Source: Octopus bimaculoides (lineage: Eukaryota). Taken from it: 32,241 nucleotides of DNA. A program made the translations under genes and the position numbers. The stretch covers positions 162,172,732 through 162,204,972 of the forward strand of contig NC_068983.1 of the NCBI RefSeq assembly GCF_001194135.2, read 5' to 3'. This document shows, in pieces, positions 1-24,024 of the stretch; the stretch's first letter is position 1; each line of letters opens with the position of its first letter. Below the pieces are notes generated by a model, which ran no database searches, was not told the DNA's origin, and saw only the letters and a program-made list of their open reading frames with translations.

Positions 1-392
1 TGTTCGAACTCTTCTTTCCTGCAATCCAATTTTCCGCTTTTACTTTCAGTAAATAAATGTTTCGCATATTGATAGGGATTGTTCACAAAGCTACGATAGT
101 TCTTTTCTCTCTCCTTTCTTCTGTTCTTCCTTCTTTCTTTCCTCAATAGTTCTCGATGCCTCTTTTTTATCTCTTCATATAGCTGCTTTAGCCCTTCGCT
201 TTCCTCCTCCTTTGCATCCCTCCATCTGGTTCTGAGTTTTCTCTTCTCTTCTCGAATCTTTACAATCCGTCTTTCTCTCCTCGAAGTTCTGCTCTTTGCC
301 GGTGATTCTACCTTCTCTGTTGTTTCCATTCCAAATCTTTTCTCTCCTTCTGGGAAGATTGTATAAGCCAGGTTCTCGACTTTTTGTTCGTC
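1..392 (-). mobile_element. Fragment of an RLE-type non-LTR retrotransposon ORF (HERO-like), region upstream of the RT domain; continues off the left edge
   Basis: Hand translation of the minus strand gives a stop-free frame: QKVENLAYTIFPEGEKRFGMET...SRRERRIVKIREEKRKLRTRWRDAKEEESEGLKQLYEEIKKRHRELLRKERRKNRRKEREKNYRSFVNNPYQYAKHLFTESKSGKLDCRKEEFE. This matches the recalled pre-RT pattern of HERO-clade elements (ERFG ... RRRKER..R..F..NP..F.K.L....SG.L.C..EE). It is missing from the ORF track, presumably because it has no stop inside the window. Confidence 0.75.
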
Positions 393-3300
393 GTGCGTAC
401 GTTCGAGTAAACGAACATGCGTACCTATGTGCGTTCGTTCTTTATCATATATACGTGCGCACGTTCGAACAAACGAACGTACGTACCTACGTGCGTTTGT
501 ACTTTCGCATATATACGTGCGTACGTTCGAACAAATGAACGTATGCACCTACGTGCGTACGTTCGAACACACGAACGTATGCACCTACGTGCGTTCGTTC
601 TTTCGTATATATACGTGCGTACGTTCGAAAAAAAGAACGTACATACCTACGTGCGTTCGTTACTTTGCATATATACGTGCGTTCGTTCGAACAAACGAAC
701 GTACGTACCTACGTGCGTTCCTTCTTTCGCATATATACTTGCGTACGTACGTTCGAACAAACGAACGTACGTACCTACGTGCATTCGTTTTTCCTCATAT
801 ATATATACGTCCGTACGTTCGAACAAACGAACGTACGTAACTACGTGCGTTCGTTCTTTCGTATATATACGTGTATACGTTCGAACACTCGAACGAACAT
901 ACATACGTGCGTTCGTTCATTCGAATATATACGAGCGTACGCACCTTCGAACAAAAGAATGTACGTAGCAACGTGCGTTCGTTCTTTCTAATATACACGT
1001 TCGTTCGTTCAAATAAACGAACGTACGTACCTACGTGCGTTCGTTCCTTCGCATATATACGTGCGTTCGTTCGAACAAACGAACGTACGTGCCTACCTGC
1101 GTTCCTTCTTTCGCATATATACGTGCATACATTTGAACAATCGAACGTACTTACCTACGATCTGACGTTCTTTCGCATATATAAGTGCGTAGGTTCGAAG
1201 AAACGAACTTACGTACCTTCGTGCGTTCTTTCTTTCGATATATACGTGCGTACATTCGAACAAACGAACGTACGTACCTGCGTGCGTTCGTTCTTTCGCA
1301 TATATACGTGCGTTCGTTCGCACAAACGAACCTACGTACCTACGTGCGTTCGTTCTTTCGCATATATACGTGCGTACATTCGAACAAACGAACGTACATA
1401 CCTACTTGCGTTCGTTCTTTCGCATATATACGTGCGTTCGTACGTTCGAACAAACGAACGTACGTACTTACGTGCGTTCGTTCTTTCGCATATATACTTG
1501 CGTACGTCCGTTCGAACAAACGAACGTACGTACCTACGTGCGTTCGTATTTTCGCATATATACGTGCGTAAGTTCGAACAAACGAAAGACCGCACCTACG
1601 TGCGTTCGTTCTTTTGCATATATACGTGCGTACGTTCGAACAAACGAACGTACGTACCTACGTGCGTTCGTTCGTTCGCATATATACGCGCGTACGTTCG
1701 AACAGACGAGCGTACGTACCTACGTGCGTTCGCTCTTTAGCATTTATACGTGCGTACGTTTGAACAAACGAACGTACCTACCTACGTGCGTTCGTTCTTT
1801 CGCACATATATGCGCGTACTTTCGAACAAAACGAACGTACGTACTTACGTGCGTTCGTTCTTTCGCATATATACGTGCGTTCGTTCGAACAAACGAACGT
1901 ACGTACCTTCATGCGTTCGTTCTTTCGCAAATATACGCGCGTACATTCGAACAAACGAACGTACCTACATACTTGCGTTCGTTCTTTTGCACATATACGC
2001 GCGTACTTTCGAGCAAAACAACGTACATATTTACGTGCGTTCGTTCTTTCGCATGTATACGTGCGTTCGTTCGAAAATACGAACTTACGTACCTTCGTGC
2101 GTTCGTTCTTTCGCATATATACGCGCATACGTTCGAACAAACGAACGTACGTACCTACGTGCGTTCTTTCTTTCGCACATATACGCGCGTACTTTCGCAA
2201 AAAACGAACGTACGTACCTACGTGCGTTCGTTCTTTCGCACATATACGCGCGTACTTTCGAACAAAACGAACGTACGTACCTATGTTCATTCGTTCTTTC
2301 GCATGTATACGTGCGCTCGTTCGAACAAACGAACGTACGTACCTTCGTGTGGTCGTTCTTTCGCATATATACGCGCGTTCGTTCGAACAAACGAACGTAC
2401 GTACCTACGTGCGTTCGTTCTTTCGCACATATACTCGCGTACTTTCGAAGAAAACGAACGTACGTACTTAAGTTCGTTCTTTCGCATGTATATGCGCGTT
2501 CGTTCGAACAAACGAACGTACGTACCTATGTGCGTTCGTTCTTTCGCACATATACTCGCGTACTTTCGAAGAAAACGAACGTACGTACTTACGCTCGTTC
2601 TTTCGCATACATACGCGCGTACGTTCGAACAGACGAAAGTACGTACCTACGTGCGTTCGTTCTTTCGCACACATACGCGCGTACTTTCCAACAAAACGAA
2701 CGTACGTACTTATGTTCGTTCGTTCTTTCGCATGTATACGTGCGTTCGTTCGAACAAACGAACGTACGTACCCTCGTGTGGTCGTTCTTTGGCATATATA
2801 CGCGCGTACGTTCGAATAGACGAACGTACGTACCTACGTGCGTTCGTTCTTTCGTACGCATACGCGCGTACTTTCGAACAAAACGAACGTACGTACATAC
2901 GTGCGTTCGATCTTTCGCATTCATACGCGCGTACGTTTGAACAGACGGACGAACGCACGTACCTATGTTCTTTCGTTCTTTCGCATGTATACATGCGTTC
3001 GTTCGAACAAACGAACGTACGTACCTTCGGGTGGTCGTTCTTTCGCATATATACGCGCGTTCGGTCGAACAAACGAACGTACGTACCTACGTGCGTTCGC
3101 TCTTTCGCACATATACGCGCGTACTTTCGAACAAACGAACGTACCTACCTATTTGCGTTCGTTTTTAGCACATATACGCGCGTACTTTCGAGCAAAACAA
3201 CGTACATATTTACGTGTGTTCGTTCTTACGCAATTATACGTGCGTTCGTTCGAAAAAACGNNNNNNNNNNGTACGCATCTACGTGCGTTCGTTCGAACAA

Positions 3301-3407
3301 ACGAACGTACGTACGTACGTGCGTTCGTTCTTTCGCACAGATACGCGCGTACTTTCGAACAAAACGAACGTACGTACCTACGTGCGTTCGTTCTTTCGCA
3401 TATATAC
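387..3407 (+). repeat. ~62-bp satellite array, forward block 1
   Basis: Tandem monomers approximating TACGTGCGTTCGTTCTTTCGCATATATACGTGCGTACGTTCGAACAAACGAACGTACGTACC; period 62 seen e.g. at 1621 and 1683. N gap at 3261-3270. Confidence 0.97.
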
Positions 3408-4410
3408 AGAAAGGACGAACGCACGTTGCTACGTACGTTCTTTTGTTCGAACGTGCAACGCTCATATATATGCTAATGAACGAACGCCCGTAGTAATTTT
3501 CGTTCGATTGTTCGAACGTATACACGTGTATACACGACAGAACGAACGCACGCAGGTGCATACGTTTGTTTGTTCGAATGTACGCACGTATATATGTGGA
3601 AGAACGAACGCACGTTGTTACGTACGTTAGTTTGTTCGAACGTACGAACGCACGTATATATGCGAAAGAACGATCGCACGTAGGTACGTACGTTCGTTTG
3701 TTCGAACGTACGCACGTATATATGAGAAAAACCGAACGCACGTAGTTACGTACGTTCGTTTGTTTGAACGAACGCACGTATATATGCGAAGTAACGAACG
3801 CACGTAGGTACGTACGTTCGTTTGTTTGAACGAACGCACGTATATATGCGAAGGAACGAACGCACGTAGGTACGTACGTTCGTTTGTTCGAACGTCCGTA
3901 CGCAAGCATATATGCGAAAGAAGGAACGCACGTAGGTACGTACGTTCTTTTGTTCGAACGTGCGTACGTACGTATATATACGAAAGAACGAACGCACGTA
4001 GGTACGTACGTTCGTTTGTTCGAACGAACGCACGAGGGTACGTACGTTCGTTTGTTCGAACGTACGCACATATATATACGAAAGAACGAGCGAACGTAGG
4101 TGCATACGTTCGTTTGTTCGAACGTACGCACGTAGGTGCATACGTTCATTTGTTCGAACGTACGCACGTATATATGCGAACGAACAAACGCACGTAGGTA
4201 CGTACGTTCGTTTTTTCGAACGTGCTCACGTATATNNNNNNNNNNTACGCGCGTATATATGCGAAAGAACGAACGCACGAAGGTACGTACGTTCGTTTGT
4301 TCGAAGGAACGCACGTATATATGAGAAAAGAACGAATGTACGTAGGTACTGTCTTTCGTTTGTTCGAACGTACGCACGTATATATGCGAAAGAATGAACG
4401 CACGTAGGTA
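3408..4410 (-). repeat. ~62-bp satellite array, inverted block
   Basis: Monomers read as the reverse complement (GGTACGTACGTTCGTTTGTTCGAACGTACGCACGTATATATGCGAAAGAACGAACGCACGTA). N gap at 4236-4245. Confidence 0.95.
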
Positions 4411-4667
4411 CGTCCATTGCTCTTGTCTTAACGTACGCCCGTTCTGCCGAAGAGCTACGGAGCTTCGTCCGTTGCTCGTCTTAACGTACGCCCGTTCTAC
4501 CAAAGAGCTACGGAGCTTCGTCCGTTGCTCTTGTCTTAACGTACGCCCGTTCTGCCGAAGAGATACGGAGCTTCGTCCGTTGCTCTTGTCTTAACGTACG
4601 CCCGTTCTGCCGAAGAGCTACGGAGCTTCGTCCGTTGCTCTTGTCTTAACGTACGCCCGTTCCGCCG
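4411..4667. repeat. 55-bp minisatellite, ~4.7 copies
   Basis: Unit CGTCCGTTGCTCTTGTCTTAACGTACGCCCGTTCTGCCGAAGAGCTACGGAGCTT; the GTTC(T/C) register recurs at 4441, 4494, 4549, 4604 and 4659. Confidence 0.95.
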
Positions 4668-6692
4668 TGAGTTCGTCCTTTCGCATATATACTTGCATAC
4701 GTACGTTCGAACAAACGAAAGACCGTACATACGTGCGTTCTTTTCTTCGCATATATACGTGCGTACGTTCCAACAGACGAACGTACGTACCTACGTNNNN
4801 NNNNNNNNNNNNNNNNNNNCCTGTCTTAACGTTCGCCCGTTCTGCCGAAGAGCTACGGAGCTTCTTCCGTTGCTCTTGTCTTAACGTACGCCCGTTCTGC
4901 CGAAGAGCTACGGAGCTTCGTCCGTTGCTCTTGTCTTAACGTACGCCCGTTCCGCCGTGAGTTCGTCCTTTCGCATATATACTTGCATACGTACGTTCGA
5001 ACAAACGAAAGACCGTACATACGTGCGTTCTTTTCTTCGCATATATACGTGCGTACGTTCCAACAGACGAACGTACGTACCTACGTGCGTTCGTTCTTTC
5101 GAATATATACTTGCGTACGTACGTTCGAACAAACGAACATACGTACCTACGTGATTTTGTTCTTTCGCATATATACGTGCGTACGTTCGAACAGACGGAC
5201 GAACGTAGGTATCTACGTGCATTTGTTCTTTCGTGTATATACCTGCGTACGTTTGAACAAACGAACGTACGTACCTACTTGCGTTCGTTGTTTCGCATAT
5301 ATACTTGCGTACGTTCGTTCGGACAAACGAACGTACGTACGCCCCTACGTGCGTTCGTTCTTTCGCATGTATACGTGCGTACGTTCGAAGAAACGAAAGT
5401 CCATACCTACGTGCGTTTGTTTTTTCGCATATATACGTGCGTACATTCGAACAAACGAACGTACGTCCATACGTACGTTCGTTCTCTCTCGTATATACGT
5501 GCGTACGCACGTTCGAACGAACGAACGTACATACCTTCTTGCGTTCGTTTTTTTCGCATATATACGTGCGTACGATCGAATAAACGAACGTACGTACATA
5601 CGTGCGTACGTTCTTTCGCATATATACATGCGTACGTTCGAACAAACGAAAGTCCGCACCTACGTGCGTTCGTCCTTTCGCATATATATGTGCGTACGTT
5701 CGAACAAACGAACGTACGTACCTACGTACATTCGTTCCTTCGCATATATACGTCCGTTCGTTCGAACAAACGAACGTACGCACCTTCATGCGTTCGTTCT
5801 TTCGCATATATACGCGCGTACGTTCGAACAGACGGACGAACGTACGTACCTACGTGCGTTTGTTCTTTCTCATATATACGTGTGTACGTTCGAACAAACG
5901 AATGTACTTACCTACGTGCCTTTGTTCTTTCGCATATATACGTCAGTACGTTCGAACAAACGAACGTACGTACATTCGTGCGTTCCTTCCTTCGCATATA
6001 TACGTGCGTACGTTTGAACAAACGAACGTACGTCCACGTGCGTTCGTTCCTTCGCATATATACGTGCGTACGTTCGAACAAACGAACGTACTTACCTACG
6101 TACGTTCTTTCTCTCGCATACATACGTGCGTAGGCACGTTCGAACAAAAGAACGTAGGTACCTACGTGCGTTTGGTCCTTCGCATATATACGTGCGTATG
6201 CACGTTCGAGCGAACGAAATTACGTACCTACTTGCGTTCGTTCTTTCTCATATATACGCTTGTACTTTCGAACAAACGAACGTACTTACCTACGTACGTT
6301 TGTTCTTTCGCATCTATACGTCCGTACGTTCGAACAAACGAAAGTCCACACCTACGTGCGTTCGTTCTTTCGCATATATACGTGAGTTCGTATGTTCGAA
6401 CAAACGAACGTACGTACCTACGTGCGTTCGTTCTTTCGCATATATACGCGCGTACGTTCGAACAGATGGACGAACGTACGTACCTACGTGCGTTCGTTCT
6501 TTCTCATATATACGTGTGTACGTTCGAACAAACGAATGTACTTACCTACGTGCGTTTGTTCTTTCGGATATATACGACCGTACGTTCGAACAAACGTTAG
6601 TCCACACCTACGTGCGTTCGTTCTTTCGCATATATACGTGCGTACGTACGTTCGAACAAACGAACGTACCTACCTACGTGCGTTCATTCCTT
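4667..6692 (+). repeat. ~62-bp satellite array, forward block 2 (interrupted by the gap and 55-bp units at 4797-4957)
   Basis: Same monomer as block 1; ends at ...CCTACGTGCGTTCATTCCTTT near 6692. Confidence 0.95.
4820..4957. repeat. 55-bp minisatellite, second block (~2.5 copies; may be a false duplication across the gap)
   Basis: Same unit as 4411-4667. It follows the N gap at 4797-4819 and is followed by sequence identical to 4667-4796. Confidence 0.8.
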
Positions 6693-6817
6693 TTTGCAGC
6701 TGAGGAGTACATTTTCATTGTTCATTCTATGTAGTGTTCTCACTACATGAATGAATGGAGCTTTTACGAAACTTACGTACTGCTATTACCTATTGAATTT
6801 TTGTTGCTTTTCTGAAA

Positions 6818-6922
6818 ATATATATATATATATGGACGTATATATATATATATATATNNNNNNNNNNCACACATATATATATGTATATATATACATGCAT
6901 ATATATATGTATACACACACAC

Positions 6923-6958
<36 letters not shown>

Positions 6959-6972
6959 TGTATGTATGTATG
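6818..6972. repeat. Compound (TA)n/(CA)n/(TATG)n microsatellite with N gap
   Basis: Direct reading; gap at 6858-6867. Confidence 0.95.
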
Positions 6973-7407: not shown

Positions 7408-7454
<47 letters not shown>

Positions 7455-7476
7455 TATAATAATAATAATAATAATA
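7262..7476 (+). mobile_element. Probable 3' UTR remnant of an R4/Dong-type LINE with (AAT)n tail
   Basis: CCCTAGGCATAACACCAACATGAACTT...CTCTGGGTGAGAC...TACAAAGCAAA is followed directly by ~65 bp of (AAT)n (7410-7476). It resembles the recalled 3' end of octopus R4/Dong-like elements. No coding sequence remains to confirm this. Confidence 0.4.
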
Positions 7477-8019
7477 AATGATCTGATACACTACTAGGCA
7501 CTGGCTCGCATGGCTTCTGATCTTAACTGATTGGAAGTGTTATCATGTACATTATCTTGTCTTGGTATAAAAGATGGGCTACAGCAAATATTCTGCTCCC
7601 ATACCAAAGATTTGCTTGTCATTTGTTTGACCTTAACCAGTTGAGCATGCCCCTTGGTGGCTGACGATATGTGCATCTCTGATCACTGGCAGAAGTTGTG
7701 GGGGAGCATCATAGCCATGTTTGGGGTTTGAAAAAATCACGTCAAGAAACATGGGTGTTTCGCTCAATATCTTTAAACAATCCTTATTCAGGGACCTTTT
7801 GAGCGGGATGGGCTACTCGATCTGAAGAAAATTCTAACTTGGTCCCACCTGCAAGGTCATGCGCAGTTTATCTTGATATGAGATCACCATGTCGTGCACA
7901 TATGGTGGTGATACATGTACCTGGTGTGCCCTTATGTGACGGGTAGTCATGATTAGTATACTGGGCTTCGTATATTTTACCCCAGTGTCACTTTGATGGC
8001 TTGCACTGCTCTCTCACTC
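7477..8019. mobile_element. Unclassified ~540-bp interspersed-repeat-like element embedded in (AAT)n
   Basis: A GC-richer complex segment with sharp boundaries against (AAT)n on both sides (7410-7476 and 8020-8045). It resembles a recalled high-copy octopus repeat. No credible ORF. Confidence 0.55.
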
Positions 8020-8045: not shown

Positions 8046-8257
8046 CCTTTTCTACTGTAGGCACAAGGCCTGAAATTTGGGGGAAGGAGTAAGTCGATCA
8101 CATCGACGCCAGTACTTGACTGGTTTTTAATTTATCGATCCAGAAAGGATGAAAAGCAAAGTCGACCTCGGCGGAATTTGAACTCAGAATGTATCGACAG
8201 ACGAAATACCACTAAGCATTTCGTACGGCGTGCTCACGATTCTGCCAGCTCACCGCC
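8046..8257 (-). mobile_element. SINE family A, near full length
   Basis: The reverse complement begins GGCGGTGAGCTGGCAGAATCGTGAGCACGCCG, with B-box-like TTCTGAGTTCAAATTCC and core GCCGAGGTCGACTTTGCTTTTCATCCTTTC. (AAT)n lies on both sides. Confidence 0.9.
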
Positions 8258-8258
8258 T

Positions 8259-8341
8259 TAATAATAATAACAATTATAATAATAATAGTAATAATAATAA
8301 TAATAATAATAGTAATAATAATAATAATGATGATGATGATG
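8259..8341. repeat. (AAT)n grading into (GAT)n microsatellite
   Basis: Direct reading. Confidence 0.95.
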
Positions 8342-8455
8342 AAGCTGTCCTTTAGTAGTGTGTGTATAGCTAACACAAGAAGAACAACAACAACTGTTAG
8401 CAGTAGTACAAACAAACATGGTTATCAACGATATAAAGAGTGTAAAATAAATAAA

Positions 8456-8461
8456 GAAGGA

Positions 8462-8551
<90 letters not shown>
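8456..8551. repeat. (GAAA)n microsatellite
   Basis: Direct reading. Confidence 0.97.
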
Positions 8552-8552
<1 letters not shown>

Positions 8553-11039: not shown

Positions 11040-11203
11040 AGGCGCAGGAGTAGCTGTGTGGTAAGTAGCTTGCTTCCCAACCACATGGTTCCGGGTTCAG
11101 TCCCACTGTGTGGAACCTTGGGTAAGTGTCTTCTACTATAGCTTCGGGCCGACCAAAGCCTCGTGAATAGATTTGGTAGACGGAAACTGAAAGAAGCCCG
11201 TCG

Positions 11204-11244
<41 letters not shown>

Positions 11245-11374
11245 ACACCATCGCTTGACGACCGATTTTGGTGAGTTTACGTTCCCGTAACTTAGCGGTT
11301 CGGCAAAAGTGACCGATTGAATAAGTACTAGGCTTACAAAGATTAAGTCCTGAGGTCGATTTGTTCAACTAAAA
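11040..11374 (+). mobile_element. tRNA-derived SINE family B with internal (TA)/(TG) microsatellite; 3' end lost in gap
   Basis: A-box-like TAGCTGTGTGGT, B-box GGTTCAGTCCC, CORE-like ACCTTGGGTAAGTGTCTT; closely similar to 15030-15427. Confidence 0.9.
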
Positions 11375-11642
11375 NNNNNNNNNNNNNNNNNNNNNNNNNN
11401 NNNNNNNNNNNNNNNNNNNNNNNNNNNNNNNNNNNNNNNNNNNNNNNNNNNNNNNNATAAAACTATCATAGATTATTGAACAAAAATCGATTTTAGACGA
11501 TAATTATCAATTTTTTGTGATATTTATAATCGGAGGAAGAGAATTGTAAAACAATCAATTCGGTAAAAGATAGAAACGTAGAACTAGAATATTTGACAGG
11601 CTTTGTTGTTGTTGTTCTTTTTTCATATTGTTGTTGTTGTTT

Positions 11643-11857
11643 AGGCAGCGAGCTGGCCGAATCGTTAGCACACCGGGCAAAATGCTTAGCAGCGTTTCGT
11701 CTGCCGTTACGTTCTGAGTTCAAATTCCGCCGAGGTCGACTTTGCCTTTCATCCTTTCGGGGGTCGATAAAACAAGTACCAGTTGAGTACTGGGGTTCGC
11801 TGTAATCAAGTAGCCCTGTTCCCCGAACTTGCTGGCTGTGTGCCAAAATTTGAAACC
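11643..11857 (+). mobile_element. SINE family A, best-preserved full-length copy
   Basis: AGGCAGCGAGCTGGCCGAATCGTTAGC...GTTCTGAGTTCAAATTCCGCCGAGGTCGACTTTGCCTTTCATCCTTTCGGGGGTCGATAAAACAAGTACC...GCCAAAATTTGAAACC, flanked by (GTT)n on both sides. Confidence 0.92.
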
Positions 11858-12449
11858 ATTATTGTTGTTGTCGTTGGTATTGTGGCTGTTACTGCTGCTG
11901 TTGTTGTTGTTGTTGTTGCCATAACTGGAGTTCAGTATTGCAATTTCAGTTGAAATCTTTCTTCTACTTTCTCGAGGTTAATCCATAAACCCAGTAGATT
12001 TAGATTAGCTAGATTAACAGACATGTCATTGCTATCTGGACATATGATGGCGACATCTGGATTAATTCGACGGCGGTGGTCATTTAACATGAACCAAAAA
12101 CAGCGACATAATAATCTCAGGTATACACCTTGTTTCCCGTGGTTGGCAGTCTTCTTCGTTGATCCTGAGTAATGATGGATGACCGCCCAGTCGTACTCAA
12201 TACTGGAACCGCGAATTAGGCCCCCAAACAACAAACAACAAAGGTTACTCATTGCCATCTCTTAGCTTTTTATTGTTGATCAATTTATAAATTGCATATT
12301 TTCCGTTGAATTTCGTGAATAAAAATTCTCTTTATACTTTGTTTGTGGCCTGAAGTTTGAAGACAACTGGCGACAGGAGTCACTTCCGCTGTATCACTTA
12401 ACAAGATATAATGAAACCAGATGATATGAGCGCAGTTTTACTTTCAATA

Positions 12450-12450
<1 letters not shown>

Positions 12451-12495
<45 letters not shown>
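12451..12495. repeat. (GT)n microsatellite at gap edge
   Basis: Direct reading; gap at 12496-12505. Confidence 0.95.
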
Positions 12496-12729
12496 NNNNN
12501 NNNNNTGTGCGTGCGTATGTGTATGTGTGTCTTGGATATTTGGGAATTGGTCGACCAATTACATTGTAGCTGTTACAATTGTGAATACTTCTGTATCCAG
12601 GTACTTCCAGCCAATAAATGGTTTCTCTTCGTTGAGCATGACCTAGTATTCTTCTACAATGGAATGAATAACTGAATATTGTGTCGATTATTATCAAACC
12701 TTATTCGGACGCAGACTCTTATCCTTATA

Positions 12730-13749
12730 CAGGGGTTGGACAAAATAATGGAAAACAAATTTATTTTAATATGGGATAGGACCGCCTTTGGCAATAATTA
12801 CAGCTTGAATTCTACGAGATATGAACTCGTACAGAGTTTGAATTGTTTCCAAAGGAATTTTTGTCCATTCTTCAGCTAAAACAGACTCCAGTTCTTGTAG
12901 TGATGATGGTGGAGGATATCGACTTCTTACTTGTTTTCCTAAAATACGCCATAATGTTCAATACTATTGAGATCTGGAGACTGTAGTGGCCAGATAAGAT
13001 GTTCAACTTCTCTAGAATGTTCCTCATGCCATTCAGTAACAACTTTAGCTGTGTGAATTGGTGCATTATCATCCTGAAAGATTGCGTTTCCCTCCGGAAT
13101 CAGTTCCACAAACGTAGGATGAATTGGATCAGATAAAATGCTTAAATAGTCTTGACTATTAATTCTACCATGAAGAAAAACCATTGGGCCAACGGATTTC
13201 CAAGATATAGCCCCCCCCCCCAGATCATCACAGATTCTCTTCCATGTTTAATAATTGGAAGAATGCGGACTGGGTCAAATGCTTCTTTTGGCTATCTCTA
13301 CACGTATACTCGGTCGGTGGTCGGAAATAAGGTAAAGGATGACTCGTCCGAAAAAATAACATGCTTCCACTGCTCTAGGGACCAATTCTGTAGGTTTTTA
13401 CTCCACTCTAAACGCTTTACAACGTTTGTTTTTGAAAGTAGTGGTTTTCTGATTGCAGCCCTCCCATGAAATCTGGCTTTGTACAGCTCCTGGTGAACAG
13501 TTTTTGTGGAAACTGGTTTCTCGAGGTAGTCATTAAGCTCTGCAGAAATTTTGGGAGCTCTACTTTTGTGATCCTTTCCAACAATTCGCAACGGTCCCTA
13601 TCTGAAAGTTTTGGTTTTCTTCTGGAGTTTTGTTTCGACGAGGAGGTTTTTCCCTCTTTCTCAAAGGCTGTCGTTACTTTGGAGACAGTACTTCTTGATA
13701 CGCCAAACATTTCGGCTGTTTTCCTTACGCTAGCACCTGCCATACGAAA
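12730..13749 (-). mobile_element. Tc1-like DNA transposon remnant with DD36E spacing (Incomer-type); frameshifted transposase pseudogene, one TIR
   Basis: ORF pieces: 13417-13743 (HTH: MAGASVRKTAEMFGVSRSTVSKV...RKPKLSDRDR), 13298-13591 (RKPLLSKTN..KRLEW...VIFSDESSF) and 12939-13184 (FQDDNAPIH...WPLQSPDLNSIEH). TIR-like end TA|CAGGGGTTGGACAAAATAATGGAAAAC at 12728-12756. The opposite end is missing. Confidence 0.9.
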
Positions 13750-13969
13750 TAGACAAATGTTTCAATGTCTTTTGTATACAGTTCCATCTAGTTTTGGTAT
13801 GAATGCGATCGACTCCCTTAGTTACGCAACATATCTTTCACAGCTACTTCTGACACACCGAGATATACTATTACCTGTATATGGCTGTCGCAGTACTACC
13901 GTAATAGTCTCCACTTCATGAACGCGCAATCTAGATCGCCTGCACCCTTCTCTACCTAATGAACTCGTT

Positions 13970-13984
13970 TATCTCTTCTCCCTC

Positions 13985-14019
<35 letters not shown>

Positions 14020-14098
14020 CTCGCTATTTCTCTCTCATCTTTCCTGTGTCTCATTTTCTATTCTCCACACTAACCACTTTACACTATCACCGCCCACC

Positions 14099-14143
<45 letters not shown>
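13970..14143. repeat. (CT)n-rich microsatellite region before gap 14144-14765
   Basis: Direct reading. Confidence 0.9.
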
Positions 14144-14774
14144 NNNNNNNNNNNNNNNNNNNNNNNNNNNNNNNNNNNNNNNNNNNNNNNNNNNNNNNNN
14201 NNNNNNNNNNNNNNNNNNNNNNNNNNNNNNNNNNNNNNNNNNNNNNNNNNNNNNNNNNNNNNNNNNNNNNNNNNNNNNNNNNNNNNNNNNNNNNNNNNNN
14301 NNNNNNNNNNNNNNNNNNNNNNNNNNNNNNNNNNNNNNNNNNNNNNNNNNNNNNNNNNNNNNNNNNNNNNNNNNNNNNNNNNNNNNNNNNNNNNNNNNNN
14401 NNNNNNNNNNNNNNNNNNNNNNNNNNNNNNNNNNNNNNNNNNNNNNNNNNNNNNNNNNNNNNNNNNNNNNNNNNNNNNNNNNNNNNNNNNNNNNNNNNNN
14501 NNNNNNNNNNNNNNNNNNNNNNNNNNNNNNNNNNNNNNNNNNNNNNNNNNNNNNNNNNNNNNNNNNNNNNNNNNNNNNNNNNNNNNNNNNNNNNNNNNNN
14601 NNNNNNNNNNNNNNNNNNNNNNNNNNNNNNNNNNNNNNNNNNNNNNNNNNNNNNNNNNNNNNNNNNNNNNNNNNNNNNNNNNNNNNNNNNNNNNNNNNNN
14701 NNNNNNNNNNNNNNNNNNNNNNNNNNNNNNNNNNNNNNNNNNNNNNNNNNNNNNNNNNNNNNNNNGTCATCTAA

Positions 14775-14857
14775 CGGCAGCGAGCTGGCAGAACCGTTAG
14801 CGGCGTTTTGTCCGTCCTTACATTCTGAGTTCAAATTCAGCCGCGTCGACTTTACCT
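14775..14857 (+). mobile_element. SINE family A, 5' part only, with internal deletion
   Basis: GGCAGCGAGCTGGCAGAACCGTTAGC|GGCG (deletion between the two TTAGC direct repeats)...TTCTGAGTTCAAATTCAGCCGCGTCGACTTTACCT. Confidence 0.85.
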
Positions 14858-14988
14858 GCAGTTTCGGAGAGGGAGTAAGTCGATATCATGGAGCCCAGTG
14901 TTCAACTGGTACTTATTTTATCGACCCCGAAAGGATGAAAGGCAAAGTCGACCCCGGCGACATTCGAACTCAGAACGAAAAGATGGAC
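14858..14988 (-). mobile_element. SINE family A, body and 3' part, convergent with the preceding copy
   Basis: CTGGTACTTATTTTATCGACCCCGAAAGGATGAAAGGCAAAGTCGACC...GAACTCAGAACG is the reverse complement of the family A core. Confidence 0.9.
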
Positions 14989-15029
14989 TGTGTCGCTAAA
15001 TATACTACAATGTGTTATTAAATGCAATA

Positions 15030-15427
15030 AGGCGCAGGAGTCGCTGTGTGGTAACTAGCTTGCTTACCAACCACATGGTTCCGGGTTCAGTCCCACTGCG
15101 TGGCACTTTGAGCAAGTGTCTTCTACTATAGCCTCGGGCCGACCAAAGCCTTGTGAGTGGATTTGGTAGACGGAAACTGAAAGAAGCTCGTCGTATATAT
15201 GTATATATATATGTGTGTGTGTGTGTTTATGTGTCTGTATTTGTCCCCCCACCATCACTTGACAACCGATGCTAGTGTGTTTACGTCCCCGTAACTTAGC
15301 GGTTCGGCAAAAAGAGACCGATAGAATAAGTACTAGGCTTACAAAGAATAAGTCTTGGGGTCGATTTTCTCGACTAAAAGGCTCCAGCATGGCCTCAGTC
15401 AAATGACTGAAACAAGTAAAAGAGTAA
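15030..15427 (+). mobile_element. tRNA-derived SINE family B, full length
   Basis: Same head and body as 11040-11374, internal (TA)/(TG) tract, 3' end CCAGCATGGCCTCAGTCAAATGACTGAAACAAGTAAAAGAG. Confidence 0.92.
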
Positions 15428-17509
15428 TATAAATCTTAACCCAAGTATTTTTAATCTCTCCGTAGACAGAAAAAAAAACACCGTGTCTGTTCGATCCTAG
15501 TTGGAATATTTTCTCGTATCACACCTTTGTCTAAAATTTAAAAAAGTATAGCTTATAGCAATATCATAACTTCGTTAAATTGATTTTTCCGATTTGCACA
15601 AATAGTGCTTTCACTGCCTACGTAATCTGTGATTTAATTACACCTTGCAGGTTACATTTTGGTGCCTTAATAGTTAGACCCATGCTTTGTATATTTGGTA
15701 CGTTGATTCCTAAATGTCATGAGTTCTTCTCGACCTACTCAGTGAAAAATTTTAAAACATTCCAGAGATTCTCCATTTGAGATTCCTGAACAAACACGTT
15801 CACACAATCATACGCGCGCACGCACACACACACACATACACACTTACATATAAATCGTAATGAAGCCCCCCACCTCACCCCACCCTTGTACAGTGATATA
15901 CAGACAAACAGATCTTATAGTCAATGGCATGCTTTCTTTCCTTCATTCGCCCGTTATGCCTTTTATTTGAGCAGCCTGAGACCCCATTTGTCAGTTATGC
16001 TACGCAGACCTTCATTAAGTGTTTATTATTCACAAATTAACAAATTTACGTAAAGATATAATTTGTTGTGACATGTTTGTATATCTTCGCTGTATGACTG
16101 ATAGCCATTCCAGGTGCTGCTTCGACGATGGAACAATACGTCTCTGTCTTCTAGTTTCACTCCATTCTGCGCCTGTGTAATATCGCTGGTTCTATCTGAC
16201 TAGTCCTTTATGTACAGCAGGATGTATTCCGTTACTTATGGCAAATATATAATTGTCGTAAACCATTAATAAAGACGGCTACTTAGAAATTATTCATAAT
16301 TTTTGTGAATGAGCAAGTGATAAACTTGTGAAAATATGACAAGAAACCAAACGAGAAAGTCATTGAATAACAAACACGACACACTAAGCCATTTCATACT
16401 ACAACTCCATCAAGATTTATTTATTTTTCGCATTAAGCTACGTATGTCAGAGACGTTCTCGAACATCAAATATATATATATATATANNNNNNNNNNNNNN
16501 NNNNNNNNNNNNNNNNNNNNNNNNNNNNNNNNNNNNNNNNNNNNNNNNNNNNNNNNNNNNNNNNNNNNNNNNNNNNNNNNNNNNNNNNNNNNNNNNNNNN
16601 NNNNNNNNNNNNNNNNNNNNNNNNNNNNNNNNNNNNNNNNNNNNNNNNNNNNNNNNNNNNNNNNNNNNNNNNNNNNNNNNNNNNNNNNNNNNNNNNNNNN
16701 NNNNNNNNNNNNNNNNNNNNNNNNNNNNNNNNNNNNNNNNNNNNNNNNNNNNNNNNNNNNNNNNNNNNNNNNNNNNNNNNNNNNNNNNNNNNNNNNNNNN
16801 NNNNNNNNNNNNNNNNNNNNNNNNNNNNNNNNNNNNNNNNNNNNNNNNNNNNNNNNNNNNNNNNNNNNNNNNNNNNNNNNNNNNNNNNNNNNNNNNNNNN
16901 NNNNNNNNNNNNNNNNNNNNNNNNNNNNNNNNNNNNNNNNNNNNNNNNNNNNNNNNNNNNNNNNNNNNNNNNNNNNNNNNNNNNNNNNNNNNNNNNNNNN
17001 NNNNNNNNNNNNNNNNNNNNNNNNNNNNNNNNNNNNNNNNNNNNNNNNNNNNNNNNNNNNNNNNNNNNNNNNNNNNNNNNNNNNNNNNNNNNNNNNNNNN
17101 NNNNNNNNNNNNNNNNNNNNNNNNNNNNNNNNNNNNNNNNNNNNNNNNNNNNNNNNNNNNNNNNNNNNNNNNNNNNNNNNNNNNNNNNNNNNNNNNNNNN
17201 NNNNNNNNNNNNNNNNNNNNNNNNNNNNNNNNNNNNNNNNNNNNNATATATATATATATACACGTGAGTGTGTATTGTATGTTTTTCGTTCTCTAAGAGT
17301 AACAACATTAAATGTTAATTTGGAAACTTAGTTTATCGTGATTAAATAATTAAGCCATAGAAATTGAGCGATTAATTGAAGGGATATAATGAATTAAAGT
17401 TCACTTCCACCAGTGAAATTAATGATAAACAGGACTCAATGTAACAAAAGTTCTTTATAGAGAACAACAATATCGCTGTGTGCATTTGGCGTGAGAGAAC
17501 GAGAGCGTG

Positions 17510-17593
17510 GAGCATGTGTGCGTGTGCGTATAACATGTATATACTCATACATACACATGTATGTATATATGTGTGTGTGCGTGTATGTGTATG

Positions 17594-17689
<96 letters not shown>
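17510..17689. repeat. Compound (TG)/(TA)/(GA) microsatellite
   Basis: Direct reading. Confidence 0.93.
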
Positions 17690-17692
<3 letters not shown>

Positions 17693-17823
17693 TTTGTCTT
17701 GAGTCGACAGGTTCGTTAAGCCAGAATTAATCGCAAATTCTGAAGCATTTAGCAACAGAGTATAGAAGATTCTTCCCTGAACAGGTCACCAGTCGGTAGA
17801 AAGGTCAAACCCCCGGAAGAGCG

Positions 17824-17858
17824 ACTGCTGCTGCTGCTACTGTTGCCACTGTTGCTGT

Positions 17859-17889
<31 letters not shown>

Positions 17890-17922
17890 ACTATTGTCGC
17901 TGCTGCTGCTGCTGCTGCTGCA
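17824..17922. repeat. (CTG)/(GTT) trinucleotide microsatellite
   Basis: Direct reading. Confidence 0.9.
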
Positions 17923-18044
17923 GTTACTCGTTTTCAGCTGAGTGAAGTTAAGCACTCCAGGACACAACGTGTCACCCGGATCGGGAATGGAACACATGAC
18001 TTTACGATCATGCACCGAACACCCTAAACACTAAGCTACATGCA

Positions 18045-18046
<2 letters not shown>
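17921..18046 (-). mobile_element. SINE family C head fragment
   Basis: Reverse complement GCATGTAGCTTAGTGTTTAGGGTGTT...GATCGTAAAGTCATGTGTTCCATTCCCG...GACACGTTGTGTCCTGG parallels the start of 10502-10800. Confidence 0.7.
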
Positions 18047-18099
<53 letters not shown>

Positions 18100-18355
18100 N
18101 NNNNNNNNNNNNNNNNNNNNNNNNNNNNNNNNNNNNNNNNNNNNNNNNNNNNNNNNNNNNNNNNNNNNNNNNNNNNNNNNNNNNNNNNNNNNNNNNNNNN
18201 NNNNNNNNNNNNNNNNNNNNNNNNNNNNNNNNNNNNNNNNNNNNNNNNNNNNNNNNNNNNNNNNNNNNNNNNNNNNNNNNNNNNNNNNNNNNNNNNNNNN
18301 NNNNNNNNNNNNNNNNNNNNNNNNNNNNNNNNNNNNNNNNNNNNNNNNNNNNNNN

Positions 18356-18417
<62 letters not shown>

Positions 18418-18433
18418 GTGTGTGTGTGTGTGT
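18047..18433. repeat. (CA)n - N gap - (GT)n
   Basis: Direct reading; gap at about 18100-18354. Confidence 0.93.
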
Positions 18434-19250: not shown

Positions 19251-20463
19251 AAAGATCTTAAAATCTTATTTAGCCCAGGGTCAGCTCTCTTCAACCAGAT
19301 AAAAAATATGATACAAAGCTTTCCTTTCTTAATCAGGTATAGTATACCAAGGACTATATTAACCAATGTATCTTTTATTTTTGCTAGAGTTGGCTGTCAT
19401 TTGAGGGTTATTTGGTTGATAATTCTCGTCGGTCGAGAATGTCATTAAACTTGCAATGAAATCGGTCCCTGATTCCGTTCTTTTATTTCCTAGAGTCAAT
19501 ATCTAGAATTTGGGGAGGTTCTGTTAGGATAGATTTCTGTTCAATGCGCAAATCGAAAGCAAACCCTTCAAGCGAAATTATATAAACTAAAAAAGCTAGA
19601 ATCTCAATCAAATCAGAGATAAACGTTCAGGAACGCCGAAACCCTCAAACACCTACGAAACCGCCACTAGCTAACATTTATTAAATTACAGAAAGAAGTG
19701 AATTATGTATTTGTATGGATCTAAAAAAAACACTTTTATGAACTAATTTTTTCTAGTTTCTTTGCACAATTTCTCATATGGCGCCAGATATCTCACTTTT
19801 CATCGGATATAAGACTTTGCTCTGATAAACAGTAGCCCTCAATAATAATATAAACACACCACAATGTTCTTGTGTTATTGGGATGGCGGGGGAGGGATTA
19901 CTATTCTGCGTTGTTGCTGTTGTTGTTTTTTTACTAAAATCAAACCAAACTACAGTGCCAGTTGTTAGAGCTAGTGTACCGTCAGAACTAATAATGAATT
20001 TGTTCATATCAATTGCACAAGTTGATGACATACGGAAATGAATTTTAGAAAGCCCATTATATCTGACAAATAGGATAGTGTCTGCTTGTCGTGTGTGGTA
20101 AAACAATATTTCTACGTCCACATGTTTGTGTGGCTAATATCTCCTTTCATGTGTGATTATGTAGCTATGAGATCCCAACTATGCGTAATAAATCGCAAGG
20201 AATGCCTTAATTAAAATATACAGCATATGTTGTCCTAACATTCCAACTCTTGTAGCTTTCAAACTCTGACTACAAGTTCGGTTGCCCTTTTTTAAACTAT
20301 ATAAATAGTTATGGCCTTCTATATTAAAGTAAAACTGTTTTCCCTTCTATATCAAACTATGTTAATACTTATCCCCTTCTATATTAAACTATATAAGCAA
20401 TACATACATAATATACTATATATAAATAACATATATTAGTATATTCTATGTAAATTATACGGT

Positions 20464-23489: not shown

Positions 23490-24024
23490 AGAGCATGTAC
23501 CGAGAGTGATAAAAATCAAGCCTCCAGTCAACATCATGGTTTTTGGAGTGATCACTAGCGATGGCAACGTTATGCCTCCATTCATCTTCCCACACGGCCT
23601 CAGATTCAACATGGAGGACTACATCAAATACCTGAAGGAGGTAGTGCTGCTCTGGGTTAAGAGGGTGGCTGCTGGAAGACCCTATGTCTGGCAACAGGAC
23701 TCTGCACCATGCCACACAAGCAGGAGAACCNNNNNNNNNNTGGCAACAGGACTCTGCACCATGCCACACAAGCAGGAGAACCCAGTCATGGCTGTCAGAC
23801 AATTTCTGCGGTCACATAACTCTTAACATCTGACTACCTAACTCCCCAGACTGCAACCCACATATAATATGTGGGGCGCAGTTGAGCGAGAAACCAACAA
23901 AACTCCTTGAAACAGCAAAGATGAACTGAAGGCAAGGATTATGGTAGCATTGACAAACCTAAACAAAGAGACCCTCCAGAAGAGTTGCGGGAAATTCCGA
24001 AGTCGTCCGGAAGCCGTGGTTGAA
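23490..24024 (+). mobile_element. maT-like (DD37D) transposase pseudogene fragment
   Basis: PVNIMVFGVITSDGNVMPPFIF...RPYVWQQDSAPCHTSRRTQSWLSDNFCGHITLNI*LPNSPDCNP...WGAVERETNKTP*NSKDELKARIM...FRSRPEAVVE, with stops and a frameshift at the third catalytic residue. Spacing is compatible with D37D. Confidence 0.85.

What the first reader, a model, noticed from the sequence alone, without database searches (positions are those of the whole stretch)
387..6692. 6.3-kb CpG-ladder satellite whose 62-bp monomer can fold two mutually exclusive ways
Seen: the consensus monomer has 11 CpG in 62 bp, mostly in a 4-bp register (TACG TGCG TTCG ... TACG TTCG ... AACG AACG TACG), inside otherwise AT-rich DNA. 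It contains a perfect 10-bp hairpin, CGTACGTTCG-AACAAA-CGAACGTACG. It also has a competing ~20-bp-arm hairpin across the monomer junction, CGAACAAACGAACGTACGTA-CC-TACGTGCGTTCGTTCTTTCG (17/20 match). Many variants are CG>TG/CA type, suggesting methylation-driven decay. Inference: the unit grew from an (NNCG)n microsatellite and could be a methylation-dense or cruciform-forming domain, or a structured-RNA source. I do not recognise it as a described satellite family.
Basis: partly seen in the sequence, partly recalled or inferred. Interest (0 to 1): 0.75.

Follow-up and report, generated by a model that had tools for sequence, protein, structure and literature searches.

The report
CpG-rich 62-bp octopus satellite array
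This is a real but ordinary non-coding tandem-repeat (satellite) array in a gap-rich octopus genome scaffold; its hairpins mostly follow from its CG-every-4-bases make-up, and it shows no sign of methylation-driven decay.

Summary
The array is real. There are about 92 copies of a 62-bp unit with 11 CpG; CpG observed/expected is 2.85 against 0.80 in the flanks, and 84% of CpG spacings are multiples of 4.

It is not one uniform 6.3-kb block:
- Direct monomers run 387-3407, inverted monomers 3408-4410, then an unrelated 55-bp repeat 4411-4667, then direct monomers to 6692.
- Gap 4797-4819 is flanked by a 267-bp, 98.5% dovetail duplicate. This is probably an unmerged contig overlap.
- The two 10-N gaps break the monomer phase, so 29 and 49 bases (+62k) are missing, not 10.

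Both hairpins exist in the consensus, but neither looks maintained:
- The perfect 10-bp stem is intact in only 12 of 79 monomers.
- Variants break pairs as often as chance, with no covariation.
- Permuting the CG-ending units gives folds nearly as stable (z -1.9).

CpG transitions are no more frequent than other transitions (4.2% vs 3.9% per site-copy), so decay by methylation is not supported.

Dispersed repeats in the window match Octopus bimaculoides and O. sinensis DNA. No paper, Rfam family, protein or contig collection holds the sequence.

Verdict: an undescribed member of a known kind (satellite DNA).

The parts
387..3260 (+). 62-bp satellite monomers, direct orientation (about 46 copies). 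387-1684 are basic-type monomers. 1685-3260 is a sub-domain of variant types (TACGCGCG..., a 12th CpG) in irregular higher-order order.
3261..3270 (.). Assembly gap (10 N). The left side ends at monomer column 24 and the right side starts near column 53, so 29+62k bases are missing. Orientation and subfamily are the same on both sides. No dovetail.
3271..3407 (+). 62-bp monomers, direct orientation (2.2 copies), ending at the orientation switch.
3380..3426 (.). Head-to-head orientation switch. It is a fold-back with an 18-bp stem and 11-nt loop (GCATATATACA), -19.2 kcal/mol, z -5.5. It lies inside contiguous sequence, and the arms beyond the stem are not mirror images.
3408..4235 (-). Inverted sub-array (14 monomers), collinear with the start of the direct array. 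4235-4023 matches 449-661 at 93.9% over 213 bp, including the same 36-bp short monomer (514 / 4170). Monomers 3528 and 3466 pair with 868 and 930.
4236..4245 (.). Assembly gap (10 N) inside the inverted sub-array. Phase is broken: 49+62k bases are missing. No dovetail.
4246..4410 (-). Inverted 62-bp monomers (2.7 copies), abutting the 55-bp repeat.
4411..4667 (+). Second, unrelated tandem repeat: 55-bp unit CGTCCGTTGCTCTTGTCTTAACGTACGCCCGTTCTGCCGAAGAGCTACGGAGCTT, 4.7 copies, 94% matches, CpG o/e 1.7. It has no notable fold (z -0.15). It sits where the orientation turns back to direct.
4668..4796 (+). 62-bp monomers, direct orientation (2.1 copies), running into the gap.
4797..5086 (.). Gap (23 N) plus a 267-bp copy of 4530-4796 (98.5-98.9% identical, ungapped, exact dovetail). 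Probably an unmerged contig overlap, so about 290 bases of the interval are likely artefact.
   Evidence: the same pattern (42 bp, 100%) occurs at gap 23731-23740
5087..6692 (+). 62-bp monomers, direct orientation (about 26 copies), basic type with many 66-bp variants. The array ends at about 6692.
1..374 (-). Left flank: an open frame of 139 codons running off the window start. It is homologous to the N-terminal region (about residues 110-240) of 1000-1100-aa reverse-transcriptase proteins. This is a retroelement fragment cut off at the array edge.
6721..6755 (.). Right flank: a 15-bp-stem, 4-nt-loop hairpin starting 29 bases after the array. Its meaning is unknown.

Best explanation
This is a non-coding satellite (tandem-repeat) array in an octopus genome.

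Origin of the unit (inferred). The 62-bp unit is built from about 14 WWCG tetramers plus CATATA. It reads as roughly (TACG TGCG TACG TTCG)(AACG)3(TACG)3(TGCG)(TTCG)3, which is an (AACG)n-type microsatellite and its own inverted copy.

Turnover by ordinary satellite mechanisms (variants shown, mechanisms inferred):
- Replication slippage in 4-bp steps gives the 66-bp variants.
- Recombination between the unit's internal direct repeat (columns 1-15 and 37-51, 14/15 identical) gives the 36-bp short monomer.
- Unequal crossing-over gives local subfamily domains and irregular higher-order order.
- At least one segmental inverted duplication occurred.

The hairpins. Reverse-complementing WWCG units keeps the CG register, and the W positions match half the time, so any such ladder is strongly self-complementary. 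The two competing hairpins are largely a by-product of that composition. They are not maintained in the individual copies.

The CpG richness. It is a founder property that has survived because CpGs here mutate no faster than other sites (shown). That fits octopus intergenic DNA being mostly unmethylated (published; not tested for this locus).

Any role would be of the generic satellite kind (chromatin, non-B DNA), not a specific coded function.
For: - Tandem structure and consensus.
- CpG ladder.
- 4-bp unit insertions.
- The same 36-bp deletion variant in both orientation blocks, and 93.9% inverted identity against an 84% background.
- Subfamily domains.
- No CpG-specific transition excess.
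- Hairpins in the consensus, but no covariation, decay in real copies, and near-equal folds from unit permutations.
- No coding or RNA-family signal. The stop-free plus strand gives long ORFs, yet no protein relative turned up in 5.8 billion sequences, and there is no Rfam hit.
- Octopus origin. Dispersed repeats match O. bimaculoides and O. sinensis loci at 77-91% nucleotide identity, including 1004 bp of Tc1 at 87%. The best named transposase hits are octopus proteins.
- Published methylome. In O. bimaculoides under 10% of CpGs are methylated, mostly in gene bodies, and intergenic DNA and transposons are low (PMC9476566).
Against: - The same paper reports relatively higher methylation on the satellite class in O. 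bimaculoides, so this array could be methylated despite the flat mutation spectrum.
- Concerted evolution can erase decay signals, and variant counts are per copy, not per event.
- The consensus fold is still somewhat better than the ladder-preserving nulls (4.3% and 0.8% of permutations), so weak selection for dyad symmetry is not excluded.
- Only one locus from a draft, gap-rich scaffold was seen.
- Genome-wide abundance and chromosomal position are unknown.
Confidence: 0.75

Rival explanations
1. It is a sample of a major (peri)centromeric or heterochromatic octopus satellite whose dyad symmetries matter. Monomer hairpins, the fold-back switch and kb-scale inverted sub-arrays around a minor 55-bp satellite would form non-B DNA that helps specify or organise centromeric chromatin.
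For: - Short dyad symmetries are enriched in centromeric satellites of many taxa (PMC5889037).
- Tribolium satellites combine short dyads, conserved inversion sites and intermingled major and minor satellites in macro-dyad symmetries (PMC13081366).
- This locus has all three levels in miniature.
- Each monomer also carries a 21-nt alternating pyrimidine/purine tract.
- Satellites are the more methylated repeat class in O. bimaculoides.
Against: - The array is only about 6 kb, with unique-looking flanks and ordinary transposons right beside it.
- The hairpins are not conserved in the copies and show no covariation.
- The inverted arms are not mirror images of each other around either switch.
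- The draft assembly may have misplaced or mis-oriented contigs.
- No data on abundance or location.
Confidence: 0.1
2. The tandem repeats belong to, or are targeted by, a mobile element. One version is an internal repeat block of a Helitron/Helentron-like non-autonomous element, as for oyster satellites (recalled from memory, not checked). Another is a repeat array that a site-specific retroelement inserts into.
For: - The left edge abuts a 5'-truncated reverse-transcriptase element.
- A 15-bp hairpin lies 29 bases beyond the right edge.
- Two different tandem repeats sit side by side.
- Dong-R4 and Penelope retroelements are abundant in cephalopods (PMC8967140).
Against: - No terminal inverted repeats, and no repeated flanks inside the window.
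- Neither repeat occurs elsewhere in the 32-kb window, in 32 kb of other octopus DNA, or in the retroelement relative L007.
- About 92 copies is far more than typical transposon-internal blocks.
- A single junction cannot show target preference.
Confidence: 0.1
3. Much of the unusual architecture is an assembly artefact of a short-read, gap-filled scaffold through a repeat. That covers the inverted block, the two 55-bp blocks and the total length.
For: - 267-bp 98.5% dovetail at gap 4797-4819, and a 42-bp 100% dovetail at gap 23731-23740.
- Phase breaks at both 10-N gaps.
- 14 N runs in 32 kb.
- The inverted block ends exactly at a gap.
Against: - The orientation switch at 3407 and both 55-mer junctions lie inside contiguous sequence.
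- The inverted block is only 84-94% identical to its direct counterpart and has a different monomer count, so it is not a flipped copy of the same reads.
- The tandem repeat itself cannot be an artefact.
Confidence: 0.3
4. The array is a source of structured or small RNAs (hairpin precursors, piRNA-like).
For: As RNA, the consensus plus strand folds at -25.6 kcal/mol, z -3.8.
Against: - No Rfam family.
- No compensatory changes.
- The minus-strand RNA fold is not unusual (z -1.65).
- Transcription could not be examined.
Confidence: 0.04

Closest known systems
Generic animal satellite DNA with short dyad symmetries (survey of Kasinathan and Henikoff 2018, PMC5889037)
   Same: Head-to-tail monomers and about 84% copy-to-copy identity. 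Local subfamily domains. Short inverted repeats inside the monomer that are predicted to form hairpins or cruciforms.
   Different: No evidence that this array is centromeric or abundant. The dyads are explained mostly by the WWCG ladder. CpG content is unusually high (11 per 62 bp).
Tribolium major/minor satellites with macro-dyad symmetries (PMC13081366)
   Same: Orientation switches within an array. A defined fold-back inversion site. A second, unrelated satellite sits at a transition.
   Different: The scale is 1-3 kb here against tens of kb to megabases. There is a single locus, so conservation of the switch sites cannot be judged. The arms are not symmetric. The assembly is a draft.
Minisatellite or microsatellite-derived arrays (tetranucleotide (AACG)n/(TACG)n type)
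   Same: 4-bp register, 4-bp step insertions, and a unit readable as a string of tetramers.
   Different: The repeating unit that is homogenised is the 62-mer, not the tetramer. The CATATA segment breaks the register by 2 in every unit.
Mollusc satellites carried by Helentron-type elements (oyster Cg170 type; recalled from memory, not checked here)
   Same: Mollusc genome. Tandem repeats next to other short repeats. A hairpin near one edge.
   Different: No element termini or repeated flanks were found, and the array is much longer. Membership was not demonstrated.

Membership tests
Satellite DNA (tandem repeat array) | Head-to-tail copies of one unit over kilobases | tested here: met
   TRF 62-bp period, scores 3475 and 1990; about 92 monomer equivalents aligned.
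Satellite DNA (tandem repeat array) | Copies homogenised around one consensus, with local variant domains or higher-order order | tested here: met
   Mean column identity to the consensus is 92%. Copy-to-copy identity is about 84% with peaks at lags 4, 7 and 11 in 1800-3260. Subfamily map.
Satellite DNA (tandem repeat array) | High genome-wide copy number, heterochromatic location | not testable with these tools
Centromeric satellite with functional dyad symmetry | Short inverted repeats in the monomer | tested here: met
   10-bp perfect and 17/20 dyads in the consensus. They are weakly above ladder-preserving nulls and decayed in the copies.
Centromeric satellite with functional dyad symmetry | Association with CENP-A or the primary constriction | not testable with these tools
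   No chromatin or cytogenetic data were reachable.
Methylated CpG-dense domain undergoing CpG decay | Excess of C>T / G>A at CpG relative to other sites | tested here: not met
   4.2% against 3.9% per site-copy, Fisher p = 0.66. Singletons: 2 of 13 against 9 of 30 are transitions. 45% of lost CpGs became TG/CA, in line with the overall transition share.
Methylated CpG-dense domain undergoing CpG decay | 5mC measured on the array | not testable with these tools
The literature says only that the satellite class in O. bimaculoides is relatively more methylated than transposons.
Structured RNA family | Match to a curated RNA family, or base pairs kept by compensatory change | tested here: not met
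   0 Rfam hits at gathering score. 1 pair with double changes in each hairpin against 2.7-2.9 in shuffles, and paired cells below the shuffle mean.
Transposon-internal tandem repeat (Helitron/Helentron-like or other) | Array bounded by element termini that recur at other copies | tested here: inconclusive
   No inverted termini, and the flanks are unique within the window. A right-flank hairpin and a truncated retroelement on the left are present. Other genomic copies could not be fetched.
Macro-dyad satellite architecture (Tribolium type) | Kb-scale sub-arrays in opposite orientation with a defined inversion site | tested here: inconclusive
   Orientation switches at 3407 and at 4411-4667; inverted identity is 93.9% over 213 bp. 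This is a single locus in a draft scaffold with proven overlap artefacts.
Protein-coding gene | ORF with relatives or domains | tested here: not met
   ORFs up to 707 aa exist only because the plus strand of the unit has no TAA, TAG or TGA. No relative among 5.8 billion proteins, and no exact record.

The most novel reading that the evidence does not exclude
The locus could be a small sample of a genome-wide octopus (peri)centromeric satellite system. A CpG-ladder 62-mer and a minor 55-mer would be arranged in inverted sub-arrays with fixed fold-back switch sites. That would be a macro-dyad architecture so far documented only in Tribolium beetles. It might also be the methylated satellite fraction reported for O. 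bimaculoides.
Probability: 0.08. Interest if true: 0.6.

Novelty: new member of a known kind. Interest (0 to 1): 0.25.

Why it matters
Cephalopod satellites are almost undescribed, so a catalogued 62-bp CpG-ladder family would be a useful marker for octopus chromosome and centromere work.

The flat CpG mutation spectrum adds a small independent piece of evidence that this intergenic octopus DNA has not been heavily methylated in the germline.

Two practical points follow:
- The locus shows that gaps in this assembly hide duplicated contig ends and phase breaks.
- The unit has no stop codons on one strand, which produces ORFs up to 707 aa that could be mistaken for genes.

Beyond that it is an ordinary satellite.

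Tried and rejected
That leaves no test of gap continuity by reads, copy number, methylation or transcription.
- Exact protein look-ups of satellite and Tc1 ORFs: not on record.
- Protein search with a 396-aa satellite ORF: no hit.
- Literature search for four 17-18-mers of the unit: 0 papers.
- Searches for octopus or cephalopod satellite papers: nothing relevant. Marino et al. do not mention satellites.
- DNA pattern scans: viral contigs 0; prokaryote genomes 0; metagenome contigs gave 2 single chance matches in non-repetitive DNA.
- Rfam and tRNA scans of the window: nothing.
- Dovetail test at the two 10-N gaps in the array: no overlap better than the monomer background.
- Mirror symmetry of the arms around either orientation switch: rejected. 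The inverted block matches the array start instead.
- Relation of the 55-mer to the 62-mer or to other window sequence: none found.
- Pfam on the left-flank ORF itself: no significant domain. Its identity came only through longer relatives.
- Sample names of ENA contigs carrying related transposases: uninformative.

Full report
**1. Is it there?**

Yes. Tandem Repeats Finder reports a 62-bp period over 550-3260 (43.4 copies, 82% matches, score 3475) and 4956-6692 (27.3 copies), plus an array on the other strand at 3400-4235.

A wrap-around alignment to the consensus splits the interval into about 100 monomer segments, 79-87 of them essentially complete. The majority consensus is TACGTGCGTACGTTCGAACAAACGAACGTACGTACCTACGTGCGTTCGTTCTTTCGCATATA, with 11 CpG. 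Real copies carry 9.4 CpG on average.

- CpG observed/expected is 2.85 in the array against 0.80 in the other 25 kb of the window. GC is 46% against 37%.
- Of 862 CpG-to-next-CpG spacings, 50% are exactly 4 and 84% are multiples of 4.

So the 'CpG ladder' is a fair description.

**2. The interval is not one homogeneous array**

- Direct monomers 387-3407.
- Reverse-complement monomers 3408-4410.
- A different 55-bp repeat 4411-4667 (4.7 copies, about 95% alike, CpG o/e 1.7).
- Direct monomers 4668-4796.
- A gap, then 55-bp units again at 4820-4957.
- Direct monomers to 6692.

**3. The gaps, tested first**

Gap 4797-4819. The last 267 bases to its left equal the first 267 to its right at 98.5%, ungapped, as an exact dovetail (BLAST 98.9% over 265 bp). 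Other copies of the 55-mer are only about 95% alike.

A second gap elsewhere in the window (23731-23740) shows the same thing: 42 bp at 100%. It also duplicates a transposase peptide on both sides. This assembly therefore leaves unmerged contig overlaps at gaps.

I read 4797-5086 as probable artefact. There is then one 55-mer block, not two.

Gaps 3261-3270 and 4236-4245. Neither has a dovetail. The monomer phase does not carry across either one.
- At the first, the left side stops at column 24 and the right resumes near column 53.
- At the second, the sequence stops at column 10 and resumes at column 60.
- So 29+62k and 49+62k bases are missing rather than 10.
- Orientation and subfamily agree across both gaps, so the array plausibly continues, with an unknown number of units lost.

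**4. Architecture**

The inverted block is not a mirror image of what lies next to it. It is collinear with the start of the direct array.
- 4235-4023 matches 449-661 at 93.9% over 213 bp, against a background of about 84%.
- Both carry the same rare 36-bp short monomer (514 and 4170).
- Monomers 3528 and 3466 pair with 868 and 930.

This is a diverged segmental inverted duplication, provided the scaffold is right.

The head-to-head switch at 3407 lies in contiguous sequence and is itself a fold-back: an 18-bp stem and 11-nt loop at -19.2 kcal/mol, z -5.5. The switch back to direct orientation happens across the 55-mer block.

Inside the direct array, 1685-3407 is a domain of variant monomers. 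TACGCGCG... adds a 12th CpG, there is a TTCG type, and there are CACATA or CATGTA tails. Their higher-order arrangement is irregular, with identity peaks at lags 4, 7 and 11. The rest is the basic type.

**5. How the unit is built and how it changes**

The unit can be read as CG-terminated pieces: TACG TGCG TACG TTCG AACAAACG AACG TACG TACCTACG TGCG TTCG TTCTTTCG CATATA. Each of the three 8-mers looks like two tetramers whose first CG has mutated. That reading is my inference from the sequence.

On this view the ancestor is roughly (AACG)3(TACG)3 TGCG (TTCG)3 with a short head. That is a tetranucleotide tract followed by its own inverted copy.

- Length variants support tetramer behaviour. About 20 monomers are 66 bp (two are 70 bp) through net insertions of NNCG-type units inside the ladder.
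- Columns 1-15 and 37-51 form an internal direct repeat (14/15 identical). Recombination across it explains the 36-bp monomer and the 36- and 98-bp periods that TRF sees at 452-661.

These are ordinary slippage and unequal-exchange signatures. The variants are shown; the mechanisms are inferred.

**6. The two hairpins**

Both exist in the consensus and share columns 15-32, so they exclude each other.
- With DNA parameters the minimum-energy fold uses the long imperfect hairpin: -17.7 kcal/mol, z -3.85 against dinucleotide shuffles.
- With RNA parameters the plus strand uses the 13-pair version of the short hairpin: -25.6 kcal/mol, z -3.76.

Three tests argue that they are by-products rather than maintained structures.

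(a) Composition. Reverse-complementing WWCG units keeps the CG register, so any such ladder is self-complementary.
- Permuting the twelve CG-terminated pieces gives a mean of -13.75 +/- 2.04 kcal/mol. 4.3% of permutations fold as well as the real order, and 12.8% do as dimers.
- 12% of permutations contain a perfect stem of at least 10 bp.
- Keeping CpG positions fixed and shuffling the other letters gives z -2.8.

(b) No covariation across 79 distinct monomers.
- Hairpin 1 has 85.7% of cells paired against 86.2% in shuffles.
- Hairpin 2 has 89.1% against 89.4%.
- Each has a single pair with double changes, against 2.7-2.9 expected.

(c) Decay in the copies.
- The exact 26-mer hairpin occurs only 7 times in the window.
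- The 10/10 stem is intact in 12 of 79 monomers.
- Real monomers fold at -12.4 +/- 3.1 kcal/mol, no better than the permutation null.

**7. CpG decay**

Per site-copy, transitions occur at 4.2% of CpG positions. The figure is 3.9% at non-CpG positions (Fisher p = 0.66) and 6.3% at non-CpG C/G positions.

- Counting each distinct variant once gives the same transition/transversion ratio at CpG and non-CpG sites (odds ratio 1.0).
- Among singletons, 2 of 13 CpG-site variants are transitions against 9 of 30 elsewhere.
- Of 165 lost CpGs, 45% became TG or CA, which is about the general transition share.
- 29 CpGs were gained, mostly through TACGTG>TACGCG.

There is no methylation-type excess.

Caveat: counts are per copy, and concerted evolution blurs the history.

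**8. Whose genome, and what is next to the array**

Two transposase remnants (12753-13745 minus strand, 23494-24024) have octopus proteins as their best named relatives.

Twenty-kb samples of the O. bimaculoides and O. sinensis assemblies share 12 and 33 dispersed-repeat matches with the window at 77-91% nucleotide identity. These include 1004 bp of Tc1 at 87%. The window is therefore from an octopus (family Octopodidae); the species was not determined.

The left flank (1-374, minus strand) is an open frame of 139 codons. It has 299 relatives, and the long ones are 1000-1100-aa proteins that carry RVT_1 at about residues 300-600. The match lies at about residues 110-240. So a 5'-truncated retroelement abuts the array, and the array might continue beyond it, outside the window.

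The right flank has a 15-bp hairpin starting 29 bases from the array, followed by AT and TATG microsatellites.

Neither tandem unit occurs elsewhere in the window or in the other loci fetched.

**9. Known or new?**

- None of four 17-18-mers of the unit occurs in about 8.3 million full texts.
- Searches for cephalopod satellite literature found nothing pertinent.
- There is no Rfam family, no protein relative of the satellite ORFs, and no viral, prokaryotic or meaningful metagenomic DNA match.
- Dfam and Repbase could not be queried.

As a kind of object it is well known. Satellites with short dyad symmetries are widespread (PMC5889037). Satellites with orientation switches, fixed inversion sites and an intermingled minor satellite are described in Tribolium, whose authors say such macro-dyads are so far documented only in that genus (PMC13081366).

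For methylation, O. bimaculoides has under 10% of CpGs methylated, concentrated in gene bodies, with low levels on transposons and intergenic DNA but relatively higher levels on the satellite class (PMC9476566). That is compatible with my result but does not settle this locus.

**10. Verdict**

This is a real, previously undescribed 62-bp satellite of an octopus genome, assembled imperfectly.

- The methylation-decay reading is not supported.
- The 'two mutually exclusive folds' are largely an automatic consequence of a WWCG ladder and are not kept in the copies.
- The one feature that could raise interest is the kb-scale inverted sub-arrays with a fold-back switch and a second satellite at the other switch. 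It rests on a draft scaffold with demonstrated overlap artefacts and needs long reads.

Interest is about 0.25. Novelty: new member of a known kind.

Noticed in passing
window 1-374 (minus strand): Open frame of 139 codons running off the window start. It has 299 relatives, the long ones being 1000-1100-aa proteins with RVT_1 at about residues 300-600 and no endonuclease domain before it. This is a 5'-truncated retroelement abutting the satellite, so the array could continue beyond it. One relative (L007) lies in a head-to-tail pair of copies.
   Followed up: partly
window 6721-6755: 15-bp-stem, 4-nt-loop hairpin starting 29 bases after the last monomer (z -3.25). It might be an element terminus or chance.
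   Followed up: partly
window 23689-23782 (gap 23731-23740): The 42 bases before this 10-N gap are repeated exactly after it, duplicating the peptide WQQDSAPCHTSRRT of a Tc1/mariner-type transposase remnant. This is independent evidence that gaps in this scaffold hide unmerged contig overlaps.
   Followed up: yes
window 12753-13745 (minus strand): Degenerate Tc1 transposon (HTH_Tnp_Tc3_2 domain, frameshifted), 87% nucleotide identity over 1004 bp to a copy in Octopus sinensis CM016861.1.
   Followed up: yes
window 7498-7971, 8047-8260, 11116-11373, 11643-11816, 15114-15427: Short dispersed repeats (SINE-like, some ending in TG microsatellites) shared with O. bimaculoides and O. sinensis loci at 77-90%. 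These were used to place the window in an octopus genome.
   Followed up: partly
window 387-6692, each monomer (columns 55-62 + 1-13): Each unit contains a 21-nt perfectly alternating pyrimidine/purine tract, CGCATATATACGTGCGTACGT, across the monomer junction. There are 48 such tracts of at least 10 nt in 387-3260.
   Followed up: partly
window 417-6734: The plus strand of the unit has no TAA, TAG or TGA in any frame, so the array yields ORFs up to 707 aa, and 425 aa on the minus strand of the inverted block. They have no relatives, but they are a trap for gene predictors.
   Followed up: yes
window 6816-6972, 7409-7477, 8259-8552, 11212-18433 and others: Very dense microsatellites ((AT)n, (TATG)n, (TAA)n, (AAAG)n, (TG)n, (CT)n). 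There are 14 N runs of 10-819 bases, several sitting right next to microsatellites.
   Followed up: no
window 20292-20396: A small 32-bp tandem repeat (3.4 copies, 71% matches), unrelated to the satellite.
   Followed up: no
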